This document shows positions 5,221 through 62,830 of a stretch of 64,000 bases of DNA, one piece after another. The notes below the pieces were generated by a model. It saw only the letters and a list, made by a program, of their open reading frames with translations. It was not told where the DNA came from and ran no database searches. Both the position numbers and the translations under genes were made by a program. Location of the stretch: the IMG/VR virus record IMGVR_UViG_3300044797_000098, positions 310,001 through 374,000 of that record. One strand, written 5' to 3'. Positions within the stretch are counted from its first letter, which is position 1, and each line of letters opens with the position of its first letter.

Positions 5221-5522
5221 TCTGTTTTAATCTCCGTGTATAATTTATCGTATTCTTTTCCGAATACCTTTTTTGCTTCGCCAATCAATAACTCCAAAAA
5301 CTTTTCTTCATCCTTTGGTTTTGCCACGGTATGTTTGTTTTTAGTTATATGCTGGATGAACCGCTCTTGTTCAATAATAAATCTAAATACCGCATCAACT
5401 GCAAACTTATTTTTTTGTTCTTCGAGATTGGAACGAAACTGTTCCAATGATATTTTACGATTGTAAAAATAGTTTTCTCGATGAAGAACTATATCAATGG
5501 GGTCTGCTCCGCCTTGTTTCAT
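5208..5522 (-). CDS. Hypothetical protein
   Basis: Start at MKQGG overlaps upstream stop (ATGA). Confidence 0.6.
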   Translation of the reverse strand: MKQGGADPIDIVLHRENYFYNRKISLEQFRSNLEEQKNKFAVDAVFRFIIEQERFIQHITKNKHTVAKPKDEEKFLELLIGEAKKVFGKEYDKLYTEIKTECIK

Positions 5523-12621: not shown

Positions 12622-15117
12622 TTATTTTACTAAGAATAATTTAGATTTACTGCGGGTTATTGCCACATATTCGCAATTTTTCTCTTCTTGACTCATATCT
12701 CTGCGAAGCGTTCTTGTCAAAAGAAACACGCGTTCTCTCTCATCTCCCTTGGCACGATGAATACTACTAAGGATTACCATATCTTGATCTTCACCATCTG
12801 TAAATAATTCTTTTAGATTATTTTTTACTTCTTCCAAACTTTTTGCATCATTTAATAATGCTCGCAAACACGATGCTTTATCGGTGCTTATTATTGGGTC
12901 TCGTCCTTTTTCTTGAAGTCTTTTTATCTCGTTTCGCTCCCATTTATCAAGCCATTCTTTAAACTCTGGTATAGTTTTAGCCTCTGATTTTTTAATCATA
13001 TAAGATAGGCTTGCCCCAATATCTCTTCCTTTTATATTTGCTCTAACGCCTTTTTTAAGTAAGGTTAAACAATGGTATATTAGTGGGGCATTTATTCTTG
13101 ACAATATAAAATCACCAGTCTTTACTTCATCTAAAAAATCATCCTCTGATATGGATATAATTTCACCTTCTTTGGCATCTGAATGATATTCAATTTCTGG
13201 CACAAGTTTTTGCGCAAGTCTAACTATATTTTTTGCACATCTATATGATATAGATAGTGGTAAAACTTTTGCATTTAATTGTTTAATTACATTATTAACT
13301 GCATTACTATCTGCTCCACGAAACGCATATAATGAATTATGACTTAATATATCATTGCCAATAAAATTATGAGTATCTGCTACTTCAATATCGTAAAAAA
13401 CTCCATTTATTTTTTCTATATTTATGATTTCATCATCAATTATTTCGCCATTAATATTTGACAAAACTTTCATACCAATAAATAATCCTGATGCGGTTAT
13501 TAACTTAAAATCTCTTTCCGGTGCATTTCTAATGTTTATATTTTCGGTTAAATTTGCTCCAAGCAAGCTACTTATTCTCTGCGCAATATCTAAAATAACT
13601 GAATAATTTTTATTACATTTTCTATAACTAAAATGCTCTCTGTCAGTTTCTCGTCTTTTATATCTTTTAAAATTATTAAATCCATTATCCATCAATAATT
13701 GATATGTTGCCGGATCACTAAATTCAAAGTTAATTGTAGAATATCGTTTTGATATTGTATGAGCATTAATTCTTACTACATATCTACTATGTTCTGCAAC
13801 TGATGAGTTTCTTTGTGTCCAATGAGGATACTCTAATAATAATCCCTTGTATTCTAAAACTTTAAAGCCATTATGACCAAAAACTTTAAATATCATATTA
13901 ATTCTATCTTGATTTAATCCTCTTTCTGTTCCATTAAAAACCGCCGTTGGCACACCAAAGCTTAATGAGTACCATTCCTCAAACCATATTGCTTCTTCAT
14001 TTGAATCTACAACCTCCAAAACCCATAATTTATCTGCTTGTTCACTGACTGCTCTATTACCAAGTGGGGCAGTTTTTGCTTTCCATTTATTAGTTTTTCC
14101 AACCCTGAACCCCAAGTCTGATCTATACATTAAATAAACTAAAAACTTTCCATCAACACATTGTTGCTCTGCCCATATTTTATGATTCGGGCTCATTGTT
14201 AATGACTTACCTAATTTTGTAGTTATCTTTATGCCGTTTTCCCACGAGCTCTTTACTTTATTAACGACTGGTTTAAAAACTAAATTACCATTTTCATATG
14301 ATAAAATCTTTTCACCAACTTCAATATCTTTTATTAGTTTTGTTCCGTCCTCTATTTGTAGAATTGTATTTTCATCCACACATTGTTTTGGGTCTCCCAC
14401 CGCTAATATACGACCACCCGTTTTACACGCTGACAATGCCATATGTATTTGTGAGGCATTTAAATCCTGAGTCTCATCGATGCAAACTCTATGCCATTTA
14501 CCAACTGGTAAATTGAATATAAACGGAAAATATACCATATCATCATAATCGATTACGTTTTTTATATTTTTACATTCCCTTAATGTTTGACAAACATTTC
14601 GTATAAATACATCTCTATCAAGCAATCCATTATCAATATCGAAACGATCCATCAATTCATCTATTTTTGATGGAATATCGAAAAGATATCCTTTACACAA
14701 TGATACCGTTCGTTTTAATGAATTGATGGTATCGAATGTATTTTTGTCGGTTCCTTTATATCCTTGTGTTGCAAGAATAGATTTTATTATATCTTGTGTT
14801 TTATCAGGATTTAACTTGACGTCTTTACCGAATGAGTTTTTTATTGCCCTAAATCCCAGCGAATGAAGTGTCATACAATCAACATAACTCGGTGCTCGTT
14901 CGCGTAATTCATCTGCTACGCTTTTATTGAAAGCAATCATTAGCGTTTTTACACGCTCATTACCTATCTTTTTAGGAATATGTTTGAACCCTTCAACAAG
15001 TGTTGAAGTTTTACCCGATCCAGCGACTGCTATAACAACGGTATGACCTTGTCCTTCACGAATGTCTTTGAATATATTTTCTTGATATGACGACCAAACT
15101 CTTTTAGGCTTTTGCAT
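12622..15117 (-). CDS. uvrD: UvrD/Rep-like SF1 helicase interrupted by an intein
   Basis: Walker A AVAGSGKTS, IDETQD, GDPKQ/SLYAFRGA, SYRC, SIHRAKGDE, YVAITR. Confidence 0.92.
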   Translation of the reverse strand: MQKPKRVWSSYQENIFKDIREGQGHTVVIAVAGSGKTSTLVEGFKHIPKKIGNERVKTLMIAFNKSVADELRERAPSYVDCMTLHSLGFRAIKNSFGKDVKLNPDKTQDIIKSILATQGYKGTDKNTFDTINSLKRTVSLCKGYLFDIPSKIDELMDRFDIDNGLLDRDVFIRNVCQTLRECKNIKNVIDYDDMVYFPFIFNLPVGKWHRVCIDETQDLNASQIHMALSACKTGGRILAVGDPKQCVDENTILQIEDGTKLIKDIEVGEKILSYENGNLVFKPVVNKVKSSWENGIKITTKLGKSLTMSPNHKIWAEQQCVDGKFLVYLMYRSDLGFRVGKTNKWKAKTAPLGNRAVSEQADKLWVLEVVDSNEEAIWFEEWYSLSFGVPTAVFNGTERGLNQDRINMIFKVFGHNGFKVLEYKGLLLEYPHWTQRNSSVAEHSRYVVRINAHTISKRYSTINFEFSDPATYQLLMDNGFNNFKRYKRRETDREHFSYRKCNKNYSVILDIAQRISSLLGANLTENINIRNAPERDFKLITASGLFIGMKVLSNINGEIIDDEIINIEKINGVFYDIEVADTHNFIGNDILSHNSLYAFRGADSNAVNNVIKQLNAKVLPLSISYRCAKNIVRLAQKLVPEIEYHSDAKEGEIISISEDDFLDEVKTGDFILSRINAPLIYHCLTLLKKGVRANIKGRDIGASLSYMIKKSEAKTIPEFKEWLDKWERNEIKRLQEKGRDPIISTDKASCLRALLNDAKSLEEVKNNLKELFTDGEDQDMVILSSIHRAKGDERERVFLLTRTLRRDMSQEEKNCEYVAITRSKSKLFLVK
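13336..14382 (-). mobile_element. Intein (349 aa) in helicase motif III
   Basis: Starts with Cys after GDPKQ, ends DIEV..THNFIGNDILSHN followed by Ser; removal restores GDPKQ-SLYAFRGA. Confidence 0.93.
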
Positions 15118-15176
15118 CACAACAATATAAACCCACCACCATTTTCGCACAACCCACAACAAAATAATTTAATATC

Positions 15177-16746: not shown

Positions 16747-17466
16747 TTACTTCTTGTCTGGTGTGCCAATTACGACTGGTGGAACAACTACTGCTGGTGT
16801 TTGCGTTGTTTGATCGAGATTGAAAAACCCAACACCTTCGCTAATTTCATTAGCGCTCAATGATGAGGATCTATAACTTGTTATATTACGGCGCAACGAG
16901 TTATACATTTGACCAACACCAGCGCTTGTCGGGGCGAACTTCATTGTGTTGCTTGCATACATACCAAGTGATTTAGCATTAGAGAATGCATCAATTCCTG
17001 ATGAACCTATGAATACGAATAGCCAACTATATTTATTGGTTTGATGCTCAATCATTTCTTTGATTTTTGCTAAATTATATTCTGTTCCGAAGTGATGACT
17101 ATAATTTTCCTCACCATCTGTGATCAGGACATTTAAGACACGTGATGGCCTATCTTCTTCTGGTAATGCTGCTAATTTTTGACCAACGGAAGTAATAAGA
17201 TTTGAGGCCGAATATAACAACGCCGTGTTTCCATTTGTTCTATATGATAGTGATGTTAGTTCTGGAACGCTTTGTAAATCAACGAAGTCATGTATTAGTG
17301 TATAATCACTTGCGAATGTGGCAAGAGATAGTGTTGCTTTTCCATCTAACGCTTTTTGTTCCCGTATGAAACTATTAAACCCACCTATTGTATCATTAGC
17401 AATAGATGTCATTGATCCAGAACGATCAAGTAAAATTGATATATGCGTATAATTTGGATTTGTCAT
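16747..17466 (-). CDS. von Willebrand factor A domain protein
   Basis: MIDAS LDRSGSM, GNTAL, ITDGEEN. Confidence 0.88.
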   Translation of the reverse strand: MTNPNYTHISILLDRSGSMTSIANDTIGGFNSFIREQKALDGKATLSLATFASDYTLIHDFVDLQSVPELTSLSYRTNGNTALLYSASNLITSVGQKLAALPEEDRPSRVLNVLITDGEENYSHHFGTEYNLAKIKEMIEHQTNKYSWLFVFIGSSGIDAFSNAKSLGMYASNTMKFAPTSAGVGQMYNSLRRNITSYRSSSLSANEISEGVGFFNLDQTTQTPAVVVPPVVIGTPDKK

Positions 17467-17488
17467 TGTGTATATTTTCCTTTATAGT

Positions 17489-17791
17489 TTAAATTATATG
17501 TCGAATATTTTTCGCGATGCCAGAAAATCTGCTTGGCTCCCCCAATATATATCCTGCTTGTTTTTGATCAACTGCAAAATAATCATTTGAGTTTCCAACG
17601 GTGCAGACTAAAAAATCGGAATAAAACGCTTCCCATATAATCTTTTCAATTTGAACAACCGAAAGATCAATGGATAGTTTATCGAATATCTTTTTCGCAG
17701 CACGATCATATTGATTATGGTCTGCTCCTGCTTTTATGAAACCGAGGACATCGGCGTCTTCGAGCAATTCTTGTATGATTTGTAATGACAT
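17489..17791 (-). CDS. Hypothetical protein
   Basis: Tiling ORF. Confidence 0.6.
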   Translation of the reverse strand: MSLQIIQELLEDADVLGFIKAGADHNQYDRAAKKIFDKLSIDLSVVQIEKIIWEAFYSDFLVCTVGNSNDYFAVDQKQAGYILGEPSRFSGIAKNIRHII

Positions 17792-18019
17792 TAGATTAGC
17801 ACCATTAGTTTGTCAAGTTTTTCAATTAGATGAGGTCTCGTTGTTTTGATTGAATAATATAGAGGTTCAATTGCATCTCTGTCTTTTAGAGCAATTTGCA
17901 CAAAATCTTTTATTACTTCTTCATCACTATCTTTTGATCGGCTTCCAATTTTTAAAAACCTATCTAAAAGACAAAAATTAATATAATCGACTTGACAAGC
18001 CTTACGATTTCCGTAGCAA

Positions 18020-19397
18020 GAAAGCCCCAATGATTTATCTTGGGGATGAATTGCGTTATTAGAAATATTTTCGTAGTAATGTCGATTTTCTTAAAAAACT
18101 ATACATAATCTGATATATACTATAAGATGTATAATAAAACATATTCCATTCGCCTCTTTCCAACCGCTGATCAACAAAATCAACTAATGGAACTTATTGC
18201 TATTCGCAATGACATTTGGAATACACTAATCGATGTAGCAAACGCGTTTTATACTGATACAAAGAAAACGCTAAATAATTATGCAATGCATAAAGAAATA
18301 ACAATTCTAAAACAAACAATAGAAAAACAACACTGGTCAAAACTAAACGCAAAAGCAGCACAACGAGTGGCAACAGGGTTATTCGCTTCATATCAACAAT
18401 TTTTCAACAATATCAAAAAGAATAAACCAGCATCGCTTCCGAATAAACTTGAACCAACAGTCAAAAAATCAATCATATTCAATCAGTCAGGTTGGAATAT
18501 TTTGAAACAAAATAATTCAATCGATGGCAACATAATCGTAATAAATAAAATACCGTTTCAATATAAATCACATATCAAAAATCTCGATGAACTGAATGTC
18601 AAAGAATTAAAAATAAAATACAGAAACGATAAGTGGTTATGTGATTTATGCGTTGAATATAACGAAACCTATCCAGAAACTATCGAACCTAAACGAGTAT
18701 TAGCCATTGATCTCGGATTGAAAAATCTTGGAACAGGTATCGACAGTAATGGCACCATTGTAATAATTCCAAACAAAGCAAAGAAAGTATCCAAACACTT
18801 TGGAGAACAAATAGCAAAAATAGATACAAAAATATCAAAAAAGAAAAAAGGTAGCAGACGATATAAAAAATTGAGAGCAATACGAAGAAAATTATTCAAT
18901 AAAAAGAACGCACAGGTAAAACAAACTCTACATATTCAGAGTAAAAGAATTGTGAATATGAACTATCATACGATAGTAATTGGTGATCTATCCGTAAAAG
19001 AACTAATGAACAAGCAGAACAATAATAAAAAAGGTGTAAGAAAATCTTTCGGTCAATCGAATGTCAGTATGTTTCTAACATATCTATCATATAAAAGCAT
19101 TGGCAAAACCAATATCATAAAAATAGATGAGCGACATACGACGCAACTAAACTCGCTAACAGGTAAGAAGTTTCCAGAAAAAATTGAATTAAAAGATCGA
19201 ACAGTAAAACTAACGGATAGTATTGAGATCGATCGTGATCTCAACTCGGCTATAAATATCTATAACAGATGGTATAGCAACCAAATTGTGCCACTGACAG
19301 CGCCACTGGATTTATTCAGTGTGCTTGAAAAGAGTAATCTTTTCAAGAAAACTTGAAACATAAGAACCCCCGAACATTTATGTCGGGGAGTATGTCA
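18020..19397 (+). mobile_element. Non-autonomous IS200/IS605/IS607-type element carrying tnpB only
   Basis: Left hairpin CCCCAA..TTGGGG (18025-18045), right hairpin CCCCGA..TCGGGG-AGTATGTCA; no TnpA; junctions ambiguous by a shared GA. Confidence 0.88.
18127..19356 (+). CDS. tnpB: RNA-guided endonuclease TnpB
   Basis: HTH start IRLFPT..Q; RuvC LAIDLGLK, VIGDL, IDERHTTQ, IDRDLNSAINI. Confidence 0.92.
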   Translation: MYNKTYSIRLFPTADQQNQLMELIAIRNDIWNTLIDVANAFYTDTKKTLNNYAMHKEITILKQTIEKQHWSKLNAKAAQRVATGLFASYQQFFNNIKKNKPASLPNKLEPTVKKSIIFNQSGWNILKQNNSIDGNIIVINKIPFQYKSHIKNLDELNVKELKIKYRNDKWLCDLCVEYNETYPETIEPKRVLAIDLGLKNLGTGIDSNGTIVIIPNKAKKVSKHFGEQIAKIDTKISKKKKGSRRYKKLRAIRRKLFNKKNAQVKQTLHIQSKRIVNMNYHTIVIGDLSVKELMNKQNNNKKGVRKSFGQSNVSMFLTYLSYKSIGKTNIIKIDERHTTQLNSLTGKKFPEKIELKDRTVKLTDSIEIDRDLNSAINIYNRWYSNQIVPLTAPLDLFSVLEKSNLFKKT

Positions 19398-19425
19398 GAT
19401 AATCTTATATTTGCACCTGCACATT

Positions 19426-19701
19426 TCATATCAATACCATCAACTTATCTATTTTTTCAATTAGGTGAGGGCGGTCAATTTTAATTGCATTGTATAAAAA
19501 ATATAATAACTCACTATGAATACCAAGTGATTTTAGTTCATCAAAATAACATTTCATTATTTCCGCATCTCTAAAAGATTTAATATATTCTCTCTGACCT
19601 TTAAAATAACATCCTTCATATTCATCTGAACCATAATTTTCGCACGCGAGACATATATCTAATCCTGATTCAACGCAGTCTTCTATTGCTATAAAACTCA
19701 A
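19426..19701 (-). CDS. Small protein, family D, tag DKLMVLI
   Basis: Cys-rich start; RPHLIEKIDKLMVLI. Confidence 0.75.
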   Translation of the reverse strand: MSFIAIEDCVESGLDICLACENYGSDEYEGCYFKGQREYIKSFRDAEIMKCYFDELKSLGIHSELLYFLYNAIKIDRPHLIEKIDKLMVLI

Positions 19702-20045
19702 AACAACACCATCAATTTATCAAAACGCTTTATGAAAGTATCCTTATCAAAATTATCTAATGAATAGATTGTATTCTGTTTTGTTGTGTGTATGAAACGA
19801 TTTTCTTTTGTCATTGCGAAGAATGTATTCTCATCATCATAATTTACATCAACAACATATCCAATATCATTTACAACATTATACACCATAACTTCTTCCG
19901 AAAACAATGCTCCATTATCTTTTATGATGATTGAATAATTGTGATCTGCTGGAAGAATGAAAATATCATTTCCAGCGCAAGACATTAGATTTTTTGACAA
20001 TGCTGATAGTTCTTTATTACATACCTTGCAGGTATATGTTTTCAT
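19698..20045 (-). CDS. Small Zn-ribbon protein, family C, tag DKLMVLF
   Basis: CKVC...C. Confidence 0.7.
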   Translation of the reverse strand: MKTYTCKVCNKELSALSKNLMSCAGNDIFILPADHNYSIIIKDNGALFSEEVMVYNVVNDIGYVVDVNYDDENTFFAMTKENRFIHTTKQNTIYSLDNFDKDTFIKRFDKLMVLF

Positions 20046-20176
20046 ATAAGTAATAGATATTTTTCTAATTGTTCAGATGTAAATTGCGTCCTATGGATGA
20101 AGTTATATATTTCAATAAAATCATTCAGTGATGTTATGATGCTTGTTGCTTTATATGTTTCCAATAAATGTTTCAT
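20042..20176 (-). CDS. 44-aa protein (not in track), duplicate of the 3' half of the next gene, tag EKYLLLI
   Basis: MKHLLETY...FIEIYNFIHRTQFTSEQLEKYLLLI; ATGA-coupled on both sides. Confidence 0.65.
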   Translation of the reverse strand: MKHLLETYKATSIITSLNDFIEIYNFIHRTQFTSEQLEKYLLLI

Positions 20177-20397
20177 GTTAGTAATAGATATTTTTCCAAT
20201 TGTTCGACTGTAAAATGTGTATGACGAATAAAATTATATGTTTCAATAAATGTTTCTGTCTTAACGTATAAATGTTTTGATACAACATAAGTATCCACTA
20301 ATAATTTGATTTCGTGTTTTAGATTTGTCATATCGTTGTTTAGATCTACACCTAATTCACCAGCAATAAACGCTATATATAATGCCACAAAATACAT
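20173..20397 (-). CDS. Small protein, tag EKYLLLT
   Basis: FIETYNFIRHTHFTVEQLEKY. Confidence 0.7.
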   Translation of the reverse strand: MYFVALYIAFIAGELGVDLNNDMTNLKHEIKLLVDTYVVSKHLYVKTETFIETYNFIRHTHFTVEQLEKYLLLT

Positions 20398-20403
20398 TTA
20401 TTT

Positions 20404-21354
20404 TTATGGATTATCACCTAAATAATATGATTTTACAATTTCTGAAACAAACCTCATTGTATCTCGTGCTTCTGATATTTCAATATATTCGTTAGTCTGC
20501 GCTCCGCGCGAATTATGGTATCCGCATGTAAGATTAACTGCATTCTTTGCGTATCCATTCTTGTATAACGCATACACATCAGTGCTCAATCCGCATACAA
20601 TTTCTCGTGGCATTCCTAAATTAAAAGCAAGTTCGAGCATATGCACAACCTTTTCGTATGTGCATATTACTGTGTTGCTAATTTTTGGAACCAATTGATT
20701 GCTATGATTTCCACGATCGACCTGAACCAATAACTCAAACTCCTTCAATTTATCCATTTTGCAAGCACTTGCGCTTTGCAACCCAATCTCTTCATCGGTC
20801 GGGAAAAACAATCCCATATCATATCCAGTATTCAGCGCAATCCAAGTATTGATTGCGACACCAAGCCTGTCATCACCGCCAACTTGCAATTTGCAGTCTT
20901 TATCCTGAATAATTCTTCGTATCTCACCCTCGTGTTCAATCATTTTGATCACTGGTTCAACTTTTTGGCTGGACAATTGGCTTCGATTTTCAATCGTGCT
21001 TTCTTCCTTATCCGTTAGCCAAGAATACTCGCCAAGCATACTGTATCGACTACTCTCATGATCACGACAAACATCTGTATGTGCAACGAGGCAAACTTTC
21101 GGCTCGCCTCTAATTGCAAGCATATTATGCACCGTCGAATAACGCTTGTCTTTCTTTACGCGATCCGTCTGATACCCATCTTCGTAGATAGTGAAACCTG
21201 CTCGTCCAAGGACTTTATGTAGCCATTTTCTCAGCGTCCATTCATCTGATTTGCAGCATTGAATGATATGGTATTCAAACGCTGACATATCTTTTGATTT
21301 CATTTCTTCTTTAACAATTTGTTCAACTTGTTCGCTACCTGATGAATATGACAT
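20404..21354 (-). CDS. M20/M28/M42-clan zinc peptidase
   Basis: AHTD, GGDDRLG, DEEIG, QVDR, GYHN metal ligands. Confidence 0.85.
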   Translation of the reverse strand: MSYSSGSEQVEQIVKEEMKSKDMSAFEYHIIQCCKSDEWTLRKWLHKVLGRAGFTIYEDGYQTDRVKKDKRYSTVHNMLAIRGEPKVCLVAHTDVCRDHESSRYSMLGEYSWLTDKEESTIENRSQLSSQKVEPVIKMIEHEGEIRRIIQDKDCKLQVGGDDRLGVAINTWIALNTGYDMGLFFPTDEEIGLQSASACKMDKLKEFELLVQVDRGNHSNQLVPKISNTVICTYEKVVHMLELAFNLGMPREIVCGLSTDVYALYKNGYAKNAVNLTCGYHNSRGAQTNEYIEISEARDTMRFVSEIVKSYYLGDNP

Positions 21355-21587: not shown

Positions 21588-22310
21588 TTGCATAACGATA
21601 TGCAATACTTAATATATAAAATAACCAACACAATCAACAATAAAATATATATCGGGCAGACTAAAAATTTAAAAATGAGAATTGCAAGGCATAAATCCGA
21701 AGCATTAAAAATACATAACACTAAACCTTTATATAGAAGTATAAGAAAAAACGGATTTAAAACTTTTTTATTTTCTATAATAGAGGAATGTAGCAACGCT
21801 AATGTTGATGAACGAGAGATATTTTGGATTAATTATTATAAATCGACTAATAAAAAATATGGTTATAATCTTAGCACAGGCGGTAAAGGGTATGTTGGCA
21901 CAATAAAACCACGAATTTCACCAATGAAAGGCAAAAAACACTCGAAAAAAACTAAAAGAAAAATGTCCGAACAAAGAAAAGGATCTAAAAATCCATTTTA
22001 TGGAAAAACACACACACAAGAAGTGAAAGAAAAATTATCAAAAAATCCTAATAGGAAACATTTTGGAGAGGAAAATCCATTTTACGGTAAAAAACATTCG
22101 AAAAAAACAAAAAATGCTATATCGAAAATGGCATCAAAAAGAGTGGGTGAAAAAAATCCATTCGCAAAATTAAATGCAGTCACCGTATTAGAGATACGGG
22201 AAAAATTTAAAAATAATAAAATATATATGGCCCAGTTAGCAATAGATTATAATATCAGTGAAACAACCGTGGCTAACATAATCAAAAGACGAACTTGGAA
22301 ACATATATAA
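21588..22310 (+). CDS. GIY-YIG homing endonuclease with NUMOD3 repeats and C-terminal HTH
   Basis: LIYKITN..NNKIYIGQT..R; GYN; repeated NPFYGKKHS. Confidence 0.9.
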   Translation: MHNDMQYLIYKITNTINNKIYIGQTKNLKMRIARHKSEALKIHNTKPLYRSIRKNGFKTFLFSIIEECSNANVDEREIFWINYYKSTNKKYGYNLSTGGKGYVGTIKPRISPMKGKKHSKKTKRKMSEQRKGSKNPFYGKTHTQEVKEKLSKNPNRKHFGEENPFYGKKHSKKTKNAISKMASKRVGEKNPFAKLNAVTVLEIREKFKNNKIYMAQLAIDYNISETTVANIIKRRTWKHI

Positions 22311-25994: not shown

Positions 25995-27875
25995 CTATTC
26001 CTCAATCATTGACATTAGTTCGTTTTCACTAATAATTTTAACACCAGCAGATCGTGCTTTATTTGTTTTCAATGATGTGCTGTCTTCCGAGGCGCATACT
26101 AAATGTGTGCTTGCTTTTCCAATTGTTTTAGCATATTTACCGCCAGCCTCTTCAATCATAATTGCAAGATCATCTCGTTTCACCGAAGTTTTTCCAGTTA
26201 TGGTTATAACAAACCCATTCAGTTTTCCAGTATTACTCATCGTCTTTACCTTTATTCCTAATTCTAATAACTCTTCAATAATTTTTCTATTCTTTTTTAA
26301 TCCATCAAAAAGATTTTTAGCCTTCACAACTCCAAGCCCTTTCACTGCTTGCAAGCAATTTTCAGGCGCGTTCATAATTTTGTCAAGCGTATCCAAACCA
26401 GCATTCATTACCATTTTAATCGAGGATTTTCCAACAATTGGAATGCTCAAACTTCCAAGGAATGTATCTAATGGTATTTCCGTAATGCTCCACAATGACT
26501 TATAAACATTCTCTGCCGACTTCTTGCCCATCCGTTCCAGCCCTGCCAAGTCGTCCAGCGTCAATTTATACAAGTCCGCGGGCGTGGCAACGAGACCTGC
26601 CTCGACCAACTTGTCAATCAATCCATCACCAACTTCCAAGACATTCAATCCGCTAATCCAATTAGATATACGACCTTTTATTTGGGCAGGGCAATTATCA
26701 ACATTCGTGCATTGAAGATTTTCACCATTCATTACCAAGTCGCCATTGCAAGTCGGGCAATGTTTTGGTGCTTTGAATACTGTTCCAGTTCCTTCAATCA
26801 CTTCTTTAACGCTTGGTATGACATCGTTATTTCTTGCAACAATTACTCTTGCTCCAATATCGATTTCCATAGTTTCAAGAAACGACATATTGTAGCAACT
26901 TGCGTTAGTAATTTTTGCACCAGCAAGTTCTACTTCATCGAAAACTGCTACCGGTGTTATACGACCCGAGTTCCCGCACTGTGGGCGAATGTCTCTAACT
27001 GTTGTTTCTGCTTCTTCGTTTTCAAACTTTGCTGCTATGGCTGCTTTTGGCTTGTTATTCGTCATACCATAACTATCAAACTTATCCATATTATTATTTG
27101 ATATAACCAATCCATCAAGATCATATGGTATAGTATCTCTTATCTCATTTTGAAAACGAGTGAAGTATGCATATGTATCTTTGGCAGTATCGAATAATGA
27201 ATAATCAGGGATATTAAATCCTAATTGTCTTAATCTAACAAACTGATCTACCAATGTTTTATTGTCGAGATCATCTGTCTGTATTTGATATGTTAGGATT
27301 TCTAAATACTTGCAGCCTTCACCGTCATAGGCTCTGGCAATACCACTTGCACTATTTCGTGCATTAGAATAATTTTGGAAGTATTTTTGGTGATTTTCTT
27401 TTGATAGGACTATTTCACCACGAACTGTTGCAGTAATTTTATTAGGAAGTGTTTTTGGAACACCTTGCATTTTTAATACATTGACCGTGATATCTTCTCC
27501 AATCCCTGACTTTCCTCCACGTGTTGCAGCAACAACTAATTTTCCGTCCTCATACACAAGACTTACACTCAATCCATCAATTTTCCAAGTCGTAAAAAAC
27601 TGTTCATCGGAACAATAATCATTAGCCCATTTCAAAAACTGCTGTTCTGTATTACATTTGTTCAATGAACCGAGCGGGGATTTATGTTGATACTTTTTCC
27701 ATTCACTAACTGGCTCTGCTCCAATATCAACTATCTCGTCATCATTTGGATCAAGTTTTTCAATTTCATCGTGAAGCGCATCGTATGTAGCATCTGAAAC
27801 AATCGGTTCATCGTTGTAATATGCAATACGATACTTACGAAGTAAGTCTTTCTTCGCTTTAATACTATCTGACAT
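25995..27875 (-). CDS. ligA: NAD-dependent DNA ligase
   Basis: YY...P.VSDA.YD, KIDGLS, RGEIV, N.RN.ASG, DGLV, Zn finger CPTC..C, HhH repeats, C-terminal BRCT. Confidence 0.97.
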   Translation of the reverse strand: MSDSIKAKKDLLRKYRIAYYNDEPIVSDATYDALHDEIEKLDPNDDEIVDIGAEPVSEWKKYQHKSPLGSLNKCNTEQQFLKWANDYCSDEQFFTTWKIDGLSVSLVYEDGKLVVAATRGGKSGIGEDITVNVLKMQGVPKTLPNKITATVRGEIVLSKENHQKYFQNYSNARNSASGIARAYDGEGCKYLEILTYQIQTDDLDNKTLVDQFVRLRQLGFNIPDYSLFDTAKDTYAYFTRFQNEIRDTIPYDLDGLVISNNNMDKFDSYGMTNNKPKAAIAAKFENEEAETTVRDIRPQCGNSGRITPVAVFDEVELAGAKITNASCYNMSFLETMEIDIGARVIVARNNDVIPSVKEVIEGTGTVFKAPKHCPTCNGDLVMNGENLQCTNVDNCPAQIKGRISNWISGLNVLEVGDGLIDKLVEAGLVATPADLYKLTLDDLAGLERMGKKSAENVYKSLWSITEIPLDTFLGSLSIPIVGKSSIKMVMNAGLDTLDKIMNAPENCLQAVKGLGVVKAKNLFDGLKKNRKIIEELLELGIKVKTMSNTGKLNGFVITITGKTSVKRDDLAIMIEEAGGKYAKTIGKASTHLVCASEDSTSLKTNKARSAGVKIISENELMSMIEE

Positions 27876-28646: not shown

Positions 28647-30293
28647 TTAATTACTCTTCTTGATCATTGCTTTACAATCAGCAAGAAAATAACCCTTCAT
28701 CTGTACAAAAATCATTTCGAAAAACCTCTCACCAGATTTGGGGAAAGATTTCATCCACGATCCTTGCAAAAACTTCTTATGCGCCTCTTCTTTTACGCTC
28801 TTTGGGTTTTTCAGGAATGTCATTAGATACTTGCGATGATATTCTTCTTTGCTAATGTATTCCATATTTTCTGCGACAATGATGTTATCCAAAAATAGTT
28901 TGGCGAACGCTGTGCCTGCGTGTCCTTTTCCGTGTCGTTTTTCAATATGTGATAGCAAGTTTATTATTCCTCCACCACCGAATGCCCTTAATTCGTCATC
29001 AATTCTTGGCTGAACCATATCGAACGGTGCTAAAATTGGCTTATCTCCACCATCCGGTTCCCACTCTTGTAAGTAAGCGTTTTCTTTTTCCCATTTATTT
29101 TTTGCAGCATAATAGCCAACACTAAGTTCTGCAACTCGTTTTTCTGCTGCTTCATATAGTTCTTTCTTTACATTGATCATATTATCGAGATCGACGCATA
29201 CTTTTTTCTTGAACTCTTCTGTTAGCGTTTTTACATTTGCTGGAATAACTTTGATCGAAGATAGGTGTTCTTTTATTTCAATAGGAAAATCAGCGTATGA
29301 TGTTTCCCCTTGTTTTAGCAATTTTCTCGAAGGCTCATCTGGTATGTAATAATCTGTTGCTTTAATTTCTTGTGTAGAAAATGTATCGAGGCCAGATTTA
29401 TCTTTTAGGACCTTCTTGAATGTTGCCATTGTATCCGTATTCATATTCGGATACATATTGTCAATCAGTAATGCTGGTTTTTTAGTGGTTCTATTAATTA
29501 CGAAACGAACCATACAACGATTGAGCATCTTGCTACCATAACCCGGAACCTCATCTTTATCGGATGATATATAAATAACTCCTACATATCTTGATGATAT
29601 TGATCCTATTAATCCTCTTGATTGAGGCGCATTCCACGCTTGACACGATACAATACCACGCATAGATATAGTTCCGATATCCCAAGCGCCTTCTTCTCCA
29701 TATGAAGAAAAATTAACCATATATTTTTTATTCGGGATATTTACACGAGAAAAGTTTTTGAACTCTTGGTATTGGTCTAATTTCATTAGATTGACGCCAA
29801 GAGGCTCTAACTCCGTCCATATTTTTCCAGCAAGACGAAGAATTGCTTCATCTTTGCGGAATGTTGGGTTTTTATCACCATTGAATACATCTGATTGTAA
29901 TCTTAAAACTACTTTACCGTCTTCTACTTTGACACAATTAGCCTGTTTCATTGTATATTGAACGGTTTGTAGCAGGCTGATCATAGATTGTATTTTACAA
30001 CACAATTCGTTTCTATTTTTTTCTGTTGATTTTAATGCTGCTTCGAGAATGGGATATAATCTGCTTTGTGCTGCATACATCTCATTAAGTATTTTATTAT
30101 TGAGACGAGTTCCTTCCGTTGTTGCCTCAGCGGTATTCATAATTGTGCAAGGCTCTCGGAAGTTTGCAAGCCCAATCTTTGGAAAGACTTTATCTATTTT
30201 AGATAGGGATTTAAATACTTCGTGGTTTTTTATCCACTCTGGGAATGGTCGTTTAGTATTAACTATGTATTCGATACCTTTTGCGTTATTCAT
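28647..30293 (-). CDS. Large uncharacterised protein, family F copy 5
   Basis: EGAWDIGTISMRGIVSCQAW core. Confidence 0.85.
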   Translation of the reverse strand: MNNAKGIEYIVNTKRPFPEWIKNHEVFKSLSKIDKVFPKIGLANFREPCTIMNTAEATTEGTRLNNKILNEMYAAQSRLYPILEAALKSTEKNRNELCCKIQSMISLLQTVQYTMKQANCVKVEDGKVVLRLQSDVFNGDKNPTFRKDEAILRLAGKIWTELEPLGVNLMKLDQYQEFKNFSRVNIPNKKYMVNFSSYGEEGAWDIGTISMRGIVSCQAWNAPQSRGLIGSISSRYVGVIYISSDKDEVPGYGSKMLNRCMVRFVINRTTKKPALLIDNMYPNMNTDTMATFKKVLKDKSGLDTFSTQEIKATDYYIPDEPSRKLLKQGETSYADFPIEIKEHLSSIKVIPANVKTLTEEFKKKVCVDLDNMINVKKELYEAAEKRVAELSVGYYAAKNKWEKENAYLQEWEPDGGDKPILAPFDMVQPRIDDELRAFGGGGIINLLSHIEKRHGKGHAGTAFAKLFLDNIIVAENMEYISKEEYHRKYLMTFLKNPKSVKEEAHKKFLQGSWMKSFPKSGERFFEMIFVQMKGYFLADCKAMIKKSN

Positions 30294-30300
30294 TTTAGCC

Positions 30301-31881
30301 TCAATTTATCACTTTCGCTAATTCGAGTTTGATGAACTCTGTCATTGTTGAATATAAAAACTCTGTGAATGTTTCCATATTGACTGTTCTCGATGTGTTT
30401 GCTGACACAATCGCTTTAACATTTGCTAATACTCTTGGGAACGCCTTTCTTCTATTCATCATAAGGTCCATTAAGTATCTTCTGTAATAAGATTTACTAT
30501 CAGTAAATCCTTTACTATCTGTTTGCGGAATGTTTGTTAACATATGTAAAACTATGTTTTCACATAACGGCGTGAATGGTGTATTCATTCGTATATTTTT
30601 AATTGTTTTTTGTATTTCATCATCAACAATAAGATTACCATCATAGATATCTTCCATCTTTTTAGCGAAAAACAATGGAAGACCTACACGAAAACTTTTA
30701 ACATTTCGTTCGATTTCCTCTTTATTATTATTGAGAAAATAAAACACATTTAGATCGTGTCGTGATTTTAGCGGTGTGTCCTGATATGACCAATCTCTAT
30801 TAGATATTTGATCTCTAATTTTTTCTGGTGGTGAATAGATATGTCTTATCTTATTACCGAGTTCTGGTGCATAATACACCGGAAGTTTTGTTCTTGATTG
30901 AAGCGATTTTGTGAAAATCGTGCATACTTCTTTATCATATTCAGGATACATTTTATCGATTAAAATACACGGTGATTTTTCATCTGCATCGATTGCATAT
31001 CTAACAACACAACGACGGATCATCTTGGTTCCAAGATTAGAATAACTTGGGTGATCTTCTGATTTAACTCCTGATGTGAGGTAAATAATACCAACGAACC
31101 TCGATAGGATCGATCCTACAAGGCAACGAGGATATTCACCATCCCATCGCTGACAAGACTTTATTCCTCGCATTGACATTGTTGCAATATCCCAAGCGCC
31201 TTCTTTTCCTTCGGAAGAGAATATAACACTATACTCTTTGTTTGGCATATTTTCTTTGCTGAAAACTTTGAACTGCGTTGTTTGTTCGAGATTTATGAAT
31301 GGTATTCCAAAAGCACCACATTTATCCTTTATTGCATTCATTATGCGCAATAATGGCTCTCCCTTACGGAAAACATTCTTGCCTTTATCATCGACAATAT
31401 CACCAATTAATTTCAATACGATTTTACCATCAGCCGAAACGACTGAACCATTTATGACATTGCCATCATACGGATCCATATATGTATGAAGTCGTTTCAT
31501 AATATCAGAAAATAAGTATAAATCATTCATTCTGATTTTATTTGTTGCTCTATCTTCTTTTGAATATAGATACTGTATAGTATCAGCCATATTAAATGAT
31601 GCGTCTCTTGCTTGGGCAACCGCATCAGCCATTATTGCCATCAGATTAAATACATAACTTCCTTCTTTTTTAACATTTTCAAAAGGCTTATCGATTATTG
31701 TTTTATCAATAAAATTAGGAAGCCCAACATTACGGAAAACTTTTTTGACCTTTGTTGGATTTTTAAATAATGTATGCTCTTTTAGAAACGGTGGAATGTT
31801 TTTATCCTTAAAAAGATCTGTTGAAAGAATAACTTTACTGTCTGTGGTTTCAGACTTTTTAATTTTTGCTTCGTCTTTCAT
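30301..31881 (-). CDS. Large uncharacterised protein, family F copy 4
   Basis: EGAWDIATMSMRGIKSCQRW core. Confidence 0.85.
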   Translation of the reverse strand: MKDEAKIKKSETTDSKVILSTDLFKDKNIPPFLKEHTLFKNPTKVKKVFRNVGLPNFIDKTIIDKPFENVKKEGSYVFNLMAIMADAVAQARDASFNMADTIQYLYSKEDRATNKIRMNDLYLFSDIMKRLHTYMDPYDGNVINGSVVSADGKIVLKLIGDIVDDKGKNVFRKGEPLLRIMNAIKDKCGAFGIPFINLEQTTQFKVFSKENMPNKEYSVIFSSEGKEGAWDIATMSMRGIKSCQRWDGEYPRCLVGSILSRFVGIIYLTSGVKSEDHPSYSNLGTKMIRRCVVRYAIDADEKSPCILIDKMYPEYDKEVCTIFTKSLQSRTKLPVYYAPELGNKIRHIYSPPEKIRDQISNRDWSYQDTPLKSRHDLNVFYFLNNNKEEIERNVKSFRVGLPLFFAKKMEDIYDGNLIVDDEIQKTIKNIRMNTPFTPLCENIVLHMLTNIPQTDSKGFTDSKSYYRRYLMDLMMNRRKAFPRVLANVKAIVSANTSRTVNMETFTEFLYSTMTEFIKLELAKVIN

Positions 31882-31904
31882 TTGTCAAGTTTCTCCGATT
31901 ACTA

Positions 31905-33452
31905 CTATATTTTAGCCACTGTTTGATCGTTAGTCAAGTCGTTAGATTTATTAGTTAATAACTCTTTTAATTGCAATTTTATACCAGTCGATATTTGGTT
32001 ATGAGCTGGTTCAAGCAGTTTAGTAAGAATTGCAGAATTAATTCTTTCGTTTTTATTTAAATTGAAGTATTTGTTTATACGCTTAACAAAAGATTGTATA
32101 ACTTTTTTGTTATATTTTTTTGATAGAAAAGAAAAACATAACTGTTTATAGTAATCTGATGAACTATCGAATGTATTTTTGGATACTTCTTTTATTATCG
32201 TATCAGCAATAGAATTAAAATACTCGTCAGTCAGATATTTCATATCATTACAAACAATTATTTTTTGCAATGATTTTTTAATCTTATCGTTTTTTGATAT
32301 GCAAGATATATCTGAATTAAAACTAATTGGTTTGGAATGAGATCTAATTGCATTACGAAGTCTGGTTTCTCTATTTTTTAGATTTGTTTTGAGAGGTGGT
32401 TCTTTAATAGGCAATTTTGTAGCAACCATAGTATCCATATATGATTTTGTGCGTTCTGGAAGACTTTCTCTAATTTTATTAGGTGGAAGATATAGATTTT
32501 TAATCTGGATATAAGTATTATTATACGGATAGGCTACGACTCGTATTTTGTTATTTGTTTTATTTTCTATGAATGCCCTGAATGATTCCATCACTTTACC
32601 ATCATATTCAGGATACATTTTATCAATGAGAATAATCGGTTTTTGAGTTTGAGAATCAATTGTATATCTAACAACTGACCTTCTTATCATTTTTGATCCA
32701 AGACCATCAACATCTTTTCCTGATGTTAAATATATTATACCAACACAAGGATCAATAAGTGAGCCAACTAATTGTGTCTTAAATCTTCCACCCCAACTTT
32801 GACAAGACTTTATTCCACGCATAGACATTGTTGCAATGTCCCATAACCCTTCATTGCCATTTGATGAAAAAACTATTTGATAGTTTTTCATTGGAACATT
32901 ATCGGTGCTAAATCGTTTAAAATCTTTCATTTCTTCGAGTTTTGGAAGCACTTTACCTATGTGCAATGATTTAATTTCATTATATATTTTATTATATACT
33001 TTAAATATGCTTTCGTTTTCTCTGAAAACAATTTTGCCTTGTTGATCGAGAACATCATATGTCAATTTTATCGTTATTTTACCATCATCTGATGTTTTAA
33101 CAAAACTGGATATGTTATAGGTATCTGGCATTCTTTCAACAACATATCTCCAATAATTAAGTCTATTGATTTTTTCGATTGTTTTAGGGTTTTTATTATG
33201 ATTTTTATTTTCTAAAACATACGACTTGGCTCTAATCTTATTAGAAAGAATATAATATATTGACCAAAATAAATTATTACCAGCCTCTTTTGCAATGTCA
33301 GAATTGTCGAACTTACAAGTTTCGGAACAATTAAATAATCCTATTGATGGAAAAACTTTACTTACTTTTGTCAATGATGTAAGTTTTTTATGACTTACAA
33401 GAAACTTCGGAAGTTTTTCATTTTTTAGAAACTCTTGAATGTTAGTCCGCAT
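31905..33452 (-). CDS. Large uncharacterised protein, family F copy 3
   Basis: EGLWDIATMSMRGIKSCQSW core. Confidence 0.85.
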   Translation of the reverse strand: MRTNIQEFLKNEKLPKFLVSHKKLTSLTKVSKVFPSIGLFNCSETCKFDNSDIAKEAGNNLFWSIYYILSNKIRAKSYVLENKNHNKNPKTIEKINRLNYWRYVVERMPDTYNISSFVKTSDDGKITIKLTYDVLDQQGKIVFRENESIFKVYNKIYNEIKSLHIGKVLPKLEEMKDFKRFSTDNVPMKNYQIVFSSNGNEGLWDIATMSMRGIKSCQSWGGRFKTQLVGSLIDPCVGIIYLTSGKDVDGLGSKMIRRSVVRYTIDSQTQKPIILIDKMYPEYDGKVMESFRAFIENKTNNKIRVVAYPYNNTYIQIKNLYLPPNKIRESLPERTKSYMDTMVATKLPIKEPPLKTNLKNRETRLRNAIRSHSKPISFNSDISCISKNDKIKKSLQKIIVCNDMKYLTDEYFNSIADTIIKEVSKNTFDSSSDYYKQLCFSFLSKKYNKKVIQSFVKRINKYFNLNKNERINSAILTKLLEPAHNQISTGIKLQLKELLTNKSNDLTNDQTVAKI

Positions 33453-33460
33453 ATTATGAC

Positions 33461-35053: not shown

Positions 35054-35060
35054 TATGATC

Positions 35061-45228: not shown

Positions 45229-45590
45229 TTGACCAATTCCTCTCTAATCATAACGCCCAATTCATAAGCAAAATCTTCCTGATCATATTCGGATTTTGGA
45301 TATCCGTCGAAACCTTTTTGGAATGAACGAACCCAATTTACATTTGTTTCCAAAATCTTTTCGATTGAATAACTTCTCCAATTGGTGAGGTGTGCTGGTA
45401 TAACATTTTGTTTTGCCAACATTACACACGCGAGCGCACAACAATTAGCATCCTTCTTTGGCACCCATTGTTCTTTGCCTTTGATTTTTTTGAGTTCGAT
45501 GCCCCAAGATTGAATGCCAAGTTTTACACCATTGGCCGTGATGGTTTTGATTGCATCACGAATAATCTGTTCTCGTTCTCCGTCATTCAT
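45225..45590 (-). CDS. Hypothetical protein
   Basis: Tiling ORF, ATGA coupling. Confidence 0.6.
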   Translation of the reverse strand: MNDGEREQIIRDAIKTITANGVKLGIQSWGIELKKIKGKEQWVPKKDANCCALACVMLAKQNVIPAHLTNWRSYSIEKILETNVNWVRSFQKGFDGYPKSEYDQEDFAYELGVMIREELVK

Positions 45591-48155: not shown

Positions 48156-48350
48156 TCAATAATCATTTCCTCTTTCAAGAGATTTTACTCTATCCCGTAA
48201 GCAATCTAACTCATTACACAAAAACCTTACACAATCTTTTATGTTTTCGTGGTCAATTTCTTTGTATCTTGGATATCCGTGAAAATCATTGTCTGGATTT
48301 TCTATCACCTGACTACACACGCTACATATTATTCCGGGCTTCGGTTTCAT
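48156..48350 (-). CDS. Small Cys-containing hypothetical protein
   Basis: CSVC...H..C; tiling. Confidence 0.6.
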   Translation of the reverse strand: MKPKPGIICSVCSQVIENPDNDFHGYPRYKEIDHENIKDCVRFLCNELDCLRDRVKSLERGNDY

Positions 48351-62762: not shown

Positions 62763-62830
62763 CAGGGATAGGTAAGGCTCGGACGCTGGTTTGTCAAGTC
62801 CAGTCAAAAAACTCAATGATATCAAGGCAG

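What the first reader, a model, noticed from the sequence alone, without database searches (positions are those of the whole stretch)
18020..19429. TnpB element with an exactly reconstructable empty site, rearranged RuvC and no zinc finger
Seen: removing 18020-19397 restores an intact, translationally coupled family D gene, so the insertion is clean with no target duplication and only a shared GA at the junctions. This predicts a guide of about GATAATCTTATATTTGCACC (19398 onward) and a TAM at the left flank (...TAGCAA, or up to 2 nt longer). RuvC-II reads VIGDL (G in place of E), with a Glu 49 residues later (IDERHTT), and the C-terminal CxxC pairs are absent. Established: a Gly at RuvC-II with a displaced catalytic Glu characterises Fanzors and a subset of TnpBs. 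Inference: a compact (409 aa), possibly active Fanzor-like TnpB that homes into element-free sister phages.
Basis: partly seen in the sequence, partly recalled or inferred. Interest (0 to 1): 0.62.

Follow-up and report, generated by a model that had tools for sequence, protein, structure and literature searches.

The report
Phage TnpB transposon, ends re-mapped

Summary
The ORF 18127-19356 (+) is a TnpB (NCBIfam guided_TnpB 145.6 bits against a cut-off of 100). The motif reading is correct. Gly286 replaces the RuvC-II Glu, Glu335 lies 49 residues later, and no CxxC pairs remain. All of this is invariant in 120 homologues.

The insertion is real, but its ends are 18006 and 19398, not 18020 and 19397. 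A second copy with 0 differences in 1393 bases sits at a different site in a related phage (L002). The window holds that site empty at 48230|48231.

- The target and TAM is TTAC (18002-18005), not TAGCAA. TTAC precedes the left end in 25 of 25 related viral loci.
- The guide starts at 19399 (ATAATC...).
- Correct excision restores MKCAGANIRLCKACQ..., with the CxxC seen in paralogues.

Both ends carry subterminal hairpins and there is no target duplication. The same end type occurs next to Y1 TnpA genes in other viral contigs. So this is a non-autonomous, IS608-like IS200/IS605 element. Its omegaRNA is supported by covariation.

The protein belongs to the known alternative-Glu class, in a zinc-finger-less branch. 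It has DLG rather than the DPG of pro-Fanzors. Nuclease activity and homing are inferred, not shown. It is a new member of a known kind.

The parts
18002..18005 (+). TTAC: target tetranucleotide of the insertion and predicted TAM
   Evidence: It is present in the empty site (window 48227-48230) and directly 5' of the element in L002. TTAC lies 9-10 nt upstream of GCAAGAAAG in 25 of 25 viral loci with this left end.
18006..19398 (+). Whole element, 1393 bp, carrying tnpB only (IS1341-type member of IS200/IS605)
   Evidence: It shows 0 mismatches to the copy in L002 at 572-1964. Identity ends at TTAC on the left and after GTCAG on the right.
18006..18053 (+). Left end: GATTTCCGTAGCAAGAAAG, then the hairpin CCCCAA/TTGGGG (18025-18045), then GATGAATTG
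   Evidence: Read from the sequence. The motif is conserved in 25 viral loci, with compensating changes in the stem. AAAG (18021-18024) lies 5' of the stem, where IS608 has its DNA guide (recalled from memory, not tested).
18127..19356 (+). tnpB, 409 aa, with D195 / G286 (canonical Glu position) / E335 (alternative Glu) / D371 and no zinc finger
   Evidence: Family assignment. The residues are invariant in 120 homologues. Alignment against canonical TnpBs. AF2 model has mean pLDDT 84.7. Best fold matches are ISDra2 TnpB, ISFba1 TnpB and ApmFanzor2.
19284..19398 (+). omegaRNA scaffold (5' end approximate). Helices: 19288-19291/19300-19303; 19294-19299/19393-19398 (long-range); 19304-19310/19315-19321; 19324-19332/19339-19347; right-end hairpin 19368-19373/19383-19388
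   Evidence: Across 15 family members, 97.2% of cells are paired against 30-42% in slid controls, and 10 of 17 pairs show compensatory changes. Per-sequence folds keep the same hairpins. The window fold has z = -3.4. Rfam HgcC gives a sub-threshold match over 19284-19411.
19367..19398 (+). Right end: subterminal hairpin, then AGTATGTCAG. The cleavage-site motif TCAG is 19395-19398
   Evidence: 54 viral loci share GAACCC-hairpin-GGGAGTATGTCAG, and their flanks diverge immediately after it.
19399..19418 (+). Predicted guide part of the omegaRNA (ATAATCTTATATTTGCACCT). It equals the 3' flank of the empty site
   Evidence: Inferred from the right-end boundary and the established TnpB mechanism. 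The guide length is not determined.
19399..19429 (-). 5' piece of the interrupted gene (MKCAGANIRL plus the first base of a Cys codon). Its ATG overlaps the stop of gene 19426-19701
17791..18005 (-). 3' piece of the interrupted gene (..KACQVDY...RPHLIEKLDKLMVLI)
   Evidence: The true rejoining gives LCKAC, a CxxC like those in paralogues 19698-20045, 45587-45892, 45889-46152 and 46149-46460.
48227..48250 (+). Empty counterpart of the L002 insertion: TTAC|ACAATCTTTTATGTTTTCGT, inside the intact 64-aa gene 48156-48350 (-)
   Evidence: L002 235-571 aligns to window 47918-48230, and L002 1965-2084 aligns to window 48231-48350. The L002 orthologue of the gene is truncated after ..HENIKDC.

Best explanation
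Window 18006-19398 is a non-autonomous insertion sequence of the IS200/IS605 family. It is IS608-like in its target and ends, and IS1341-type because it carries only tnpB. It has inserted 3' of a TTAC in a small gene of a roughly 406-kb phage genome.

Shown:
- The exact ends, the TTAC target and the absence of a target duplication.
- Hairpins at both ends.
- An identical copy at another TTAC site in a related phage, with that site empty here.
- A structured RNA with covarying helices that runs from the 3' part of tnpB to the right end.
- A TnpB of the alternative-Glu class without zinc ligands.

Inferred:
- The element moves as single-stranded DNA by a Y1 TnpA supplied in trans. The element has no TnpA, but the same end type is found next to TnpA genes in other viral contigs.
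- TnpB with its omegaRNA cuts DNA that has TTAC followed by ATAATCTTATATTTGC... . That sequence is the joint left after excision, or the element-free allele in a co-infecting relative.
- Recombination with an element-bearing copy would then restore or spread the element.
For: Protein identity:
- NCBIfam guided_TnpB scores 145.6 bits against a cut-off of 100, and Pfam OrfB_IS605 matches.
- Best fold matches are ISDra2 TnpB 8H1J, ISFba1 TnpB and ApmFanzor2.

Ends and target:
- The L002 copy is 0/1393 different while the phage flanks are 73-81% identical.
- The empty site lies at 48230|48231.
- TTAC precedes 25 of 25 related left ends. 54 right ends stop at GTCAG.
- A 79-nt right-end remnant lies next to another TTAC in the same 406-kb contig.

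TnpA in trans:
- Y1 TnpA ORFs with the HUH motif occur in 17 loci fetched by these end patterns. In 12 of them TnpA lies within 2.3 kb upstream of the right end, beside a canonical TnpB.

omegaRNA:
- Covariation, per-sequence folds, and an Rfam HgcC-like match.

Catalytic residues:
- D195, E335 and D371 are invariant in 120 homologues.
- E335 lies six residues before the position of the first zinc-finger Cys, as defined for E-alt TnpBs.
- Active E-alt enzymes are documented: TvTnpB and ApmFanzor2.

Mechanism of donor-joint cleavage.
Against: - No TnpA was found in the window (motif scan only), and the rest of the contig could not be read.
- No transcript data exist, so the 5' end and guide length of the omegaRNA are unknown.
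- Nuclease activity of a zinc-finger-less E-alt TnpB has not been shown in the papers I read.
- I could not measure whether E335 sits at the active site in the model, because coordinates are not exposed.
- No element-free allele of this particular site exists in the databases searched.
Confidence: 0.8

Rival explanations
1. The element is 18020-19397, with a TAM at ...TAGCAA, a guide starting at 19398, and a shared GA at the junctions.
For: Deleting 18020-19397 leaves an open frame.
Against: - The identical L002 copy includes 18006-19019 and ends at G19398, and the empty site shows TTAC|ACAATC.
- GATTNNCGTNGCAAGAAAG is conserved inside elements whose TnpBs are only 44-45% identical, and TTAC precedes it every time.
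Confidence: 0.02
2. The TnpB is a degenerate or domesticated, nuclease-dead protein. On this view, loss of the canonical Glu and of the zinc finger reflects inactivation, and the protein acts at most as an RNA-guided DNA binder.
For: - The canonical RuvC-II Glu and all four zinc ligands are missing.
- Inactivated, exapted TnpBs are known.
Against: - D195, E335 and D371 are invariant across 120 homologues at 50% identity or more.
- The E-alt arrangement is catalytically active in TvTnpB and Fanzor2.
- The gene still sits between intact transposon ends, and identical copies occupy two different sites. That is the opposite of an immobilised, exapted gene.
Confidence: 0.12
3. It is an IS607-type element moved by a serine recombinase, with a short shared core at both junctions.
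For: - NCBIfam IS607_TnpB gives a weak partial match of 57 bits against a cut-off of 350.
- E-alt pro-Fanzors are IS607-borne.
Against: - The ends have IS605-type subterminal hairpins in the same orientation, with a TTAC target on the left only and no shared core at the true junctions.
- The same ends accompany Y1 (HUH) TnpA genes.
- NCBIfam IS200_TnpB scores higher, at 96.7 bits.
Confidence: 0.02
4. New sites are not chosen by TTAC alone. The omegaRNA guide of a resident copy biases where the next copy lands, either through a TnpB R-loop or break at a near-cognate TTAC site, or through short-homology repair.
For: - Of 574 TTAC sites in the window, the one matching the L002 insertion is the single best match to the 12 nt after the window's right end (10/12, next best 8/12).
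- L002's own flank matches 9/12, while 1071 unrelated flank pairs reach at most 8.
Against: - The test was made after the similarity had been noticed.
- The other nine pairs of closely related copies at different sites score only 1-5 of 12, and this includes the remnant in the same genome at 4/12.
- No flank sequence was visibly imported at the L002 junctions.
- Classical IS608 insertion needs only TTAC.
Confidence: 0.08

Closest known systems
IS608 of Helicobacter pylori (IS200/IS605 family) and tnpB-only IS1341-type elements
   Same: - It inserts 3' of TTAC, with no terminal inverted repeats and no target duplication.
- Both ends have subterminal hairpins.
- The right end stops at TCAG, compared with TCAA in IS608 (the IS608 value is recalled from memory).
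   Different: - It carries no tnpA, so it is non-autonomous.
- It resides in a large phage genome.
- Its TnpB is of the alternative-Glu, zinc-finger-less type.
ISDra2 and ISGst TnpB-omegaRNA systems (donor-joint cleavage and transposon retention)
   Same: - The layout is the same: the omegaRNA overlaps the 3' end of tnpB and the right end, the guide is the 3' flank, and the TAM is the TnpA target.
- One end type is shared by elements with different TnpBs, as in G. stearothermophilus.
   Different: - Identity to ISDra2 TnpB is only about 20%.
- The TAM is TTAC rather than TTGAT.
- The RuvC-II Glu is displaced and there is no zinc finger.
- Activity has not been tested.
Alternative-Glu TnpBs ('TnpB2', e.g. 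TvTnpB; RIIr clades of Altae-Tran et al. 2023)
   Same: - Gly occupies the canonical RuvC-II position.
- An invariant Glu lies 49 residues downstream and six residues before the first zinc-finger position.
- The protein falls inside one E-alt clade in the tree (SH-aLRT 96).
   Different: - It belongs to a sub-branch in which all CxxC ligands are lost (13 of 26 E-alt representatives).
- I could not map it to a named RIIr branch.
Fanzor2 (ApmFz2, PDB 9B0L) and cyanobacterial pro-Fanzors
   Same: - It shares the alternative Glu.
- ApmFz2 is among the top three fold matches and has the highest identity of them, 22%.
   Different: - RuvC-I is DLG, not DPG.
- There is no zinc finger.
- The ends are IS605-type, not IS607-type or eukaryotic.
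- There is no N-terminal extension.
Rfam HgcC RNA (RF00062), an archaeal ncRNA family with a right-end-like tetraloop hairpin, linked to IS1341-type tnpB 3' ends
   Same: - The full-length model aligns to 19284-19411.
- The consensus GAACCCCCG..UUUA..CGGGGAGGAGGUCAG is nearly the window's right end.
- The link to right-end hairpins is noted in PMC4615843.
   Different: - The score is 24 bits against a gathering score of 50, so this is not a family member by Rfam's rule.
- The middle helices do not align.

Membership tests
TnpB (RNA-guided endonuclease, NCBIfam NF040570 / Pfam PF01385+PF07282) | Profile score above the curated cut-off over the full length | tested here: met
   NF040570 scores 145.6 bits against 100, covering residues 7-381. 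PF01385 scores 56.3 against 30.5. PF07282 scores 26.4 against 26.3.
TnpB (RNA-guided endonuclease, NCBIfam NF040570 / Pfam PF01385+PF07282) | RuvC D-E-D triad conserved | tested here: met
   D195, E335 (at the alternative position) and D371 are invariant in 120 homologues. Spatial proximity could not be measured.
TnpB (RNA-guided endonuclease, NCBIfam NF040570 / Pfam PF01385+PF07282) | Structured omegaRNA overlapping the 3' end of the gene and ending at the right end | tested here: met
   97.2% of cells are paired and 10 of 17 pairs show compensatory changes, against 30-42% pairing in slid controls.
TnpB (RNA-guided endonuclease, NCBIfam NF040570 / Pfam PF01385+PF07282) | RNA-guided, TAM-dependent DNA cleavage | not testable with these tools
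   This needs a biochemical or plasmid-interference assay.
IS200/IS605 family (IS608-like) | No terminal inverted repeats and no target-site duplication | tested here: met
   Comparison of filled and empty sites: TTAC|element|ACAATC against TTAC|ACAATC.
IS200/IS605 family (IS608-like) | Subterminal hairpins at both ends, in the same orientation | tested here: met
   Hairpins at 18025-18045 and 19368-19388. The stems covary across loci.
IS200/IS605 family (IS608-like) | Insertion 3' of a fixed tetra- or pentanucleotide (TTAC for IS608) | tested here: met
   TTAC is seen at 25 of 25 left ends, at the L002 site, and at the remnant in L236.
IS200/IS605 family (IS608-like) | Y1 (HUH) TnpA transposase encoded in the element | tested here: not met
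   tnpB is the only ORF between the ends, and no TnpA motif occurs in the window. The element is therefore non-autonomous (IS1341-type). The same end type lies next to TnpA in 12 or more other viral loci.
Alternative-Glu TnpB (TnpB2 / RIIr) | Non-acidic residue at the canonical RuvC-II Glu, plus a conserved Glu about 45-50 residues downstream and six residues before the first zinc-finger Cys position | tested here: met
   G286, and E335 with N342 at the first Cys position. The protein lies inside the E-alt clade.
Pro-Fanzor / Fanzor | DPG motif at RuvC-I | tested here: not met
   The motif is DLG, invariant in 120 homologues. Definition taken.
Pro-Fanzor / Fanzor | CxxC...CxxC zinc finger between RuvC-II and RuvC-III | tested here: not met
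   N342, T345, L362 and S365 occupy the ligand positions.
IS607 family | Serine-recombinase TnpA, with ends lacking IS605-type hairpins | tested here: not met
   The element holds no second ORF. Its ends are IS605-type and accompany Y1 TnpA elsewhere. IS607_TnpB scores 57 bits against a cut-off of 350.
Rfam HgcC (RF00062) | Score at or above the gathering threshold | tested here: not met
   24 bits against 50, with E = 8.5e-4 in a 251-nt search.

The most novel reading that the evidence does not exclude
The choice of a new insertion site by this TnpA-less element may be biased by its own guide RNA. The only other known site of the identical element is the best match, among all 574 TTAC sites in the window, to the 12 nt of guide next to the window copy. 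If real, a TnpB-omegaRNA complex would be helping to direct transposition or short-homology copying to near-cognate TTAC sites in related phages. That would be a natural step towards RNA-guided transposition outside CAST systems.
Probability: 0.08. Interest if true: 0.8.

Novelty: new member of a known kind. Interest (0 to 1): 0.35.

Why it matters
The finding gives a fully specified natural TnpB system. The ends are exact, the TAM is TTAC, the guide register is known, and the omegaRNA helices are supported by covariation. The nuclease is compact (409 aa), of the alternative-Glu class, and lacks the zinc finger.

Identical copies in two diverged phages show that the element was mobile very recently. 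That makes it a reasonable candidate for biochemical testing and for asking what the zinc finger contributes.

It also documents IS608-type elements moving between large phages. One type of transposon end is shared there by autonomous (TnpA plus TnpB) and TnpB-only elements.

None of this changes current understanding. The rearranged RuvC site, loss of the zinc finger in some branches, TnpB in viral genomes and the homing model are all published.

Tried and rejected
- Near-identity DNA search of 17000-20500 against GenBank phages found nothing.
- A tblastn of the TnpB against GenBank phages gave at best 27% identity.
- The search for an uninterrupted orthologue of the broken gene returned only the window's own fragment among 5.8 billion proteins.
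- An exact scan for the true empty junction in viral contigs gave 0 hits.
- An exact scan for this element's right end in metagenome contigs gave 0 hits, so that collection seems not to hold either sample.
- Look-ups of homologues seen on many contigs (P0063, P0068) returned the same site in many samples, not several sites. They could not test site choice.
- Cluster look-up for NCBI-sourced homologues gave no organism names.
- The scan of 185,579 species genomes found nothing above 28% identity.
- RNAalifold on the MAFFT alignment found only two helices, because the 3' hairpins are misaligned by indels. These were judged from per-sequence folds instead.
- A possible covariation between the 4 nt before the right-end stem and the terminal TCAN is suggestive but depends on where the stem foot is placed, so I make no claim.
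- Promoter and terminator scans were no better than shuffled sequence.
- Supplementary tables of the TnpB classification paper are not held, so no named branch could be assigned.
- No complex prediction was run, because no protein-protein claim is made.
Full report
**What is there.** The window is part of a 406,470-bp viral contig (JGI Ga0480565_0000007, also IMGVR_UViG_3300044797_000098). Almost all of its genes lie on the minus strand. They include an intein-containing UvrD-type helicase, an NAD-dependent ligase and a Glu-tRNA synthetase. Against this background one plus-strand ORF, 18127-19356 (409 aa), is a TnpB. NCBIfam guided_TnpB scores 145.6 bits against a cut-off of 100 over residues 7-381. 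Pfam OrfB_IS605 and Cas12f1-like_TNB match, as does PHROG 506. An AlphaFold2 model built on 27 homologues has mean pLDDT 84.7. Its best fold matches are ISDra2 TnpB (8H1J), ISFba1 TnpB (8IAZ) and mimivirus Fanzor2 (9B0L).

I aligned the 120 closest homologues, all at 50% identity or more.
- D195 (AIDLG) is invariant.
- The position of the canonical RuvC-II Glu is an invariant Gly (G286, IVIGDL).
- E335 (IDERHTT) is invariant and lies 49 residues later.
- D371 (DRDLN) is invariant.
- The four zinc-ligand positions read N342, T345, L362 and a variable residue (S365 here).

Against 114 more distant representatives, G286 lines up with the Glu of I-x-x-E-D-L. E335 lines up with the Pro or Asp of 'VDPxxTSQ'. 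TTQLNSLTG lines up with TSQxCSxCG.

The literature describes exactly this rearrangement:
- Gly or Pro at RuvC-II with a conserved Glu about 45-50 residues downstream (PMC10530073; PMC10691335).
- The Glu lies six residues before the first CxxC (PMC10711439).
- The arrangement is active in TvTnpB and in Fanzor2, where E467 is catalytic (PMC11832414).

Loss of the zinc finger in some TnpB branches is also noted there.

In a quick maximum-likelihood tree the alternative-Glu proteins form one clade (26 rows, SH-aLRT 96). Within it the zinc-finger-less ones form one group (13 rows, support 82). The window's clade within that group is fully supported.

RuvC-I is DLG, not the DPG that defines pro-Fanzors and Fanzors. 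'Fanzor-like' is therefore true only of the displaced Glu.

The same 409-aa protein is encoded on a 2,845-nt contig from another sample (L002).
- Its DNA matches window 18006-19398 with 0 differences in 1393 bases.
- The DNA on either side matches a different part of the window at only 73-81% identity. L002 235-571 aligns to 47918-48230, and L002 1965-2084 aligns to 48231-48350.
- So a related phage has the identical element at another site, and the window holds that site empty...AACCTTAC|ACAATCTTTT....
- In L002 the sequence reads ...ACTTTAC|GATTTCCGTAGCAAGAAAGCCCC...GGGGAGTATGTCAG|ACAATCC... .

The element therefore begins at G18006, directly after TTAC (18002-18005), and ends at G19398, with no duplication.

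Independent support comes from viral contigs. A scan for the left-end motif found 25 loci, and every one has TTAC 9-10 nt upstream of GCAAGAAAG. This includes elements whose TnpB is only 44-45% identical to this one. A scan for the right-end motif found 54 loci whose flanks diverge immediately after GTCAG.

True excision restores MKCAGANIRLCKACQVDY....

- The TAM and target is TTAC, not TAGCAA, which lies inside the left end.
- The guide starts at 19399 (ATAATCTTATATTTGC...).
- The 'shared GA' is an artefact.

**What kind of element.** Four features define IS200/IS605, and TTAC is the IS608 target. All four are present:
- no inverted repeats;
- no duplication;
- a fixed tetranucleotide on the left only;
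- subterminal hairpins in the same orientation at both ends (18025-18045 CCCCAA/TTGGGG and 19368-19388 CCCCGA/TCGGGG).

The hairpin stems differ between loci by compensating changes.

The element contains no transposase gene, and a motif scan finds no Y1 TnpA in the window. However, the same left and right end types occur in other viral contigs next to typical Y1 TnpA ORFs (...YHLIWCPKYRR...MPDHVHLFV...). In those loci TnpA is followed by shorter, canonical TnpBs that keep the Glu and the zinc finger. None of the roughly 30 loci carrying the window's TnpB clade has a TnpA.

The simplest reading is a non-autonomous, IS1341-type element mobilised in trans. This parallels one TnpA serving several IS families in G. 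stearothermophilus.

A 79-nt fragment identical to 19320-19398 lies directly after another TTAC elsewhere in the same contig (L236 2464-2542). In the full element the bases before 19320 are TTCAG, which resembles the right-end cleavage motif. The fragment may therefore be a product of aberrant cleavage, but that is inference.

**The guide RNA.** I aligned fifteen family members from the last about 220 nt of the element.
- A long-range helix covaries between CUGACA (19294-19299, inside the ORF) and UGUCAG (19393-19398, the last six bases of the element). Other subfamilies show AUGACA/UGUCAU, AUGAAC/GUUCAU and GUGAAC/GUUCAC.
- Two further helices covary: 19288-19291/19300-19303 and 19304-19310/19315-19321.
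- Overall, 97.2% of cells are paired against 30-42% when partners are slid, and 10 of 17 pairs show compensatory changes. None of 500 shuffles reaches the observed values.
- Per-sequence folds also keep a hairpin at 19324-19347 and the right-end hairpin in every member, despite different sequences.
- The window RNA folds better than every shuffle tested (0 of 200, z = -3.4).
- Rfam has no passing match. HgcC (RF00062) aligns over its full length to 19284-19411 at 24 bits (gathering score 50, E = 8.5e-4), and its consensus 3' part is almost the window's right end. HgcC was earlier linked to right-end-like hairpins of IS1341-type elements (PMC4615843).

This is the expected omegaRNA. Its 5' end and guide length remain unmeasured.

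**How it most likely works.**
- Shown: the anatomy described above and recent mobility.
- Inferred from the established model: a trans-acting Y1 TnpA excises the top strand and inserts it 3' of TTAC. TnpB bound to the omegaRNA recognises TTAC followed by the 3' flank sequence. That sequence is the scarless joint left by excision, or an element-free allele in a co-infecting relative. TnpB cuts it, and recombination with an element-bearing genome reinstates the element.

Homing between phages is plausible but untested. I found no element-free allele of this site. The one documented movement is to a new site.

**Distribution.**
- At 50% clustering, the library of 1.84 billion representative proteins holds only three full-length representatives of this clade. 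Scores then drop from 308 to 127 bits.
- Relatives at 41-60% identity occur in 14 IMG/VR contigs, several of them 147-361 kb long.
- Nothing above 27% appeared in GenBank phages.

The clade looks virus-enriched, but that is not proven.

**An unexplained detail.** Among all 574 TTAC sites in the window, the empty site at 48227 is the single best match to the 12 nt that follow the window's right end (ATAATCTTATAT against ACAATCTTTTAT, 10/12; next best 8/12).
- L002's own flank matches 9/12, and 1071 unrelated flank pairs never exceed 8.
- Nine other pairs of closely related copies at different sites score only 1-5, including the remnant in the same genome. The test was also made after the similarity had been seen.

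I therefore treat this as probably chance. A small possibility remains that the guide biases site choice.

**Verdict.** This is a real, well-delimited, recently mobile TnpB-only IS608-like element.

Noticed in passing
window 48227-48242 versus 19399-19410: [quoted passage not shown] Nine other related copy pairs show no such similarity.
   Followed up: partly
L236 2460-2542 (same 406-kb contig, outside the window): A solo 79-nt right-end fragment, identical to window 19320-19398, lies directly after a TTAC in an intergenic region beside an IscA/HesB-like gene. It lacks the 5' strands of the omegaRNA helices.
   Followed up: partly
window 12622-15162 (-): A UvrD/Rep-type helicase is interrupted by an intein (Intein_splicing and Hint hits at residues about 260-610).
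   Followed up: no
window 21588-22310 (+): A free-standing GIY-YIG/NUMOD3 homing-endonuclease-like gene is another of the window's few plus-strand ORFs, about 2 kb from the TnpB element.
   Followed up: no
window 28647-36464 (-): Five consecutive ORFs of 467-548 aa. The two that were scanned have no Pfam hit. The similar sizes suggest a tandem paralogue array.
   Followed up: no
The TnpB element has broken one member.
   Followed up: partly
window 49048-50475 (-), 25995-27875 (-), 1937-3031 (-), 62830-62903 (-): The phage encodes a Glu/Gln-type class I tRNA synthetase, an NAD-dependent DNA ligase, a DUF444 protein and a tRNA-Ile(TAT).
   Followed up: no
L088 about 5234-5290: In one family locus a second left end (AAAGAAAACC-hairpin-GGATGAATTTGG) starts 12 nt after the first element's right end and directly after a TTAC. 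One element appears to have inserted into the guide region of another.
   Followed up: no
L170-L179 (P0068 loci): In this subfamily the tnpB stop lies inside the right end, and a T5orf172/MUG113 (GIY-YIG-like) gene starts 3 nt after it.
   Followed up: no
viral loci L180-L252: One right-end type (GAACCC-hairpin-GGGAGTATGTCAG) is shared by elements with very different TnpBs: E-alt without zinc finger, canonical DRDxN, and 'derived' NADxN types. This suggests that end modules and nuclease genes are exchanged.
   Followed up: partly
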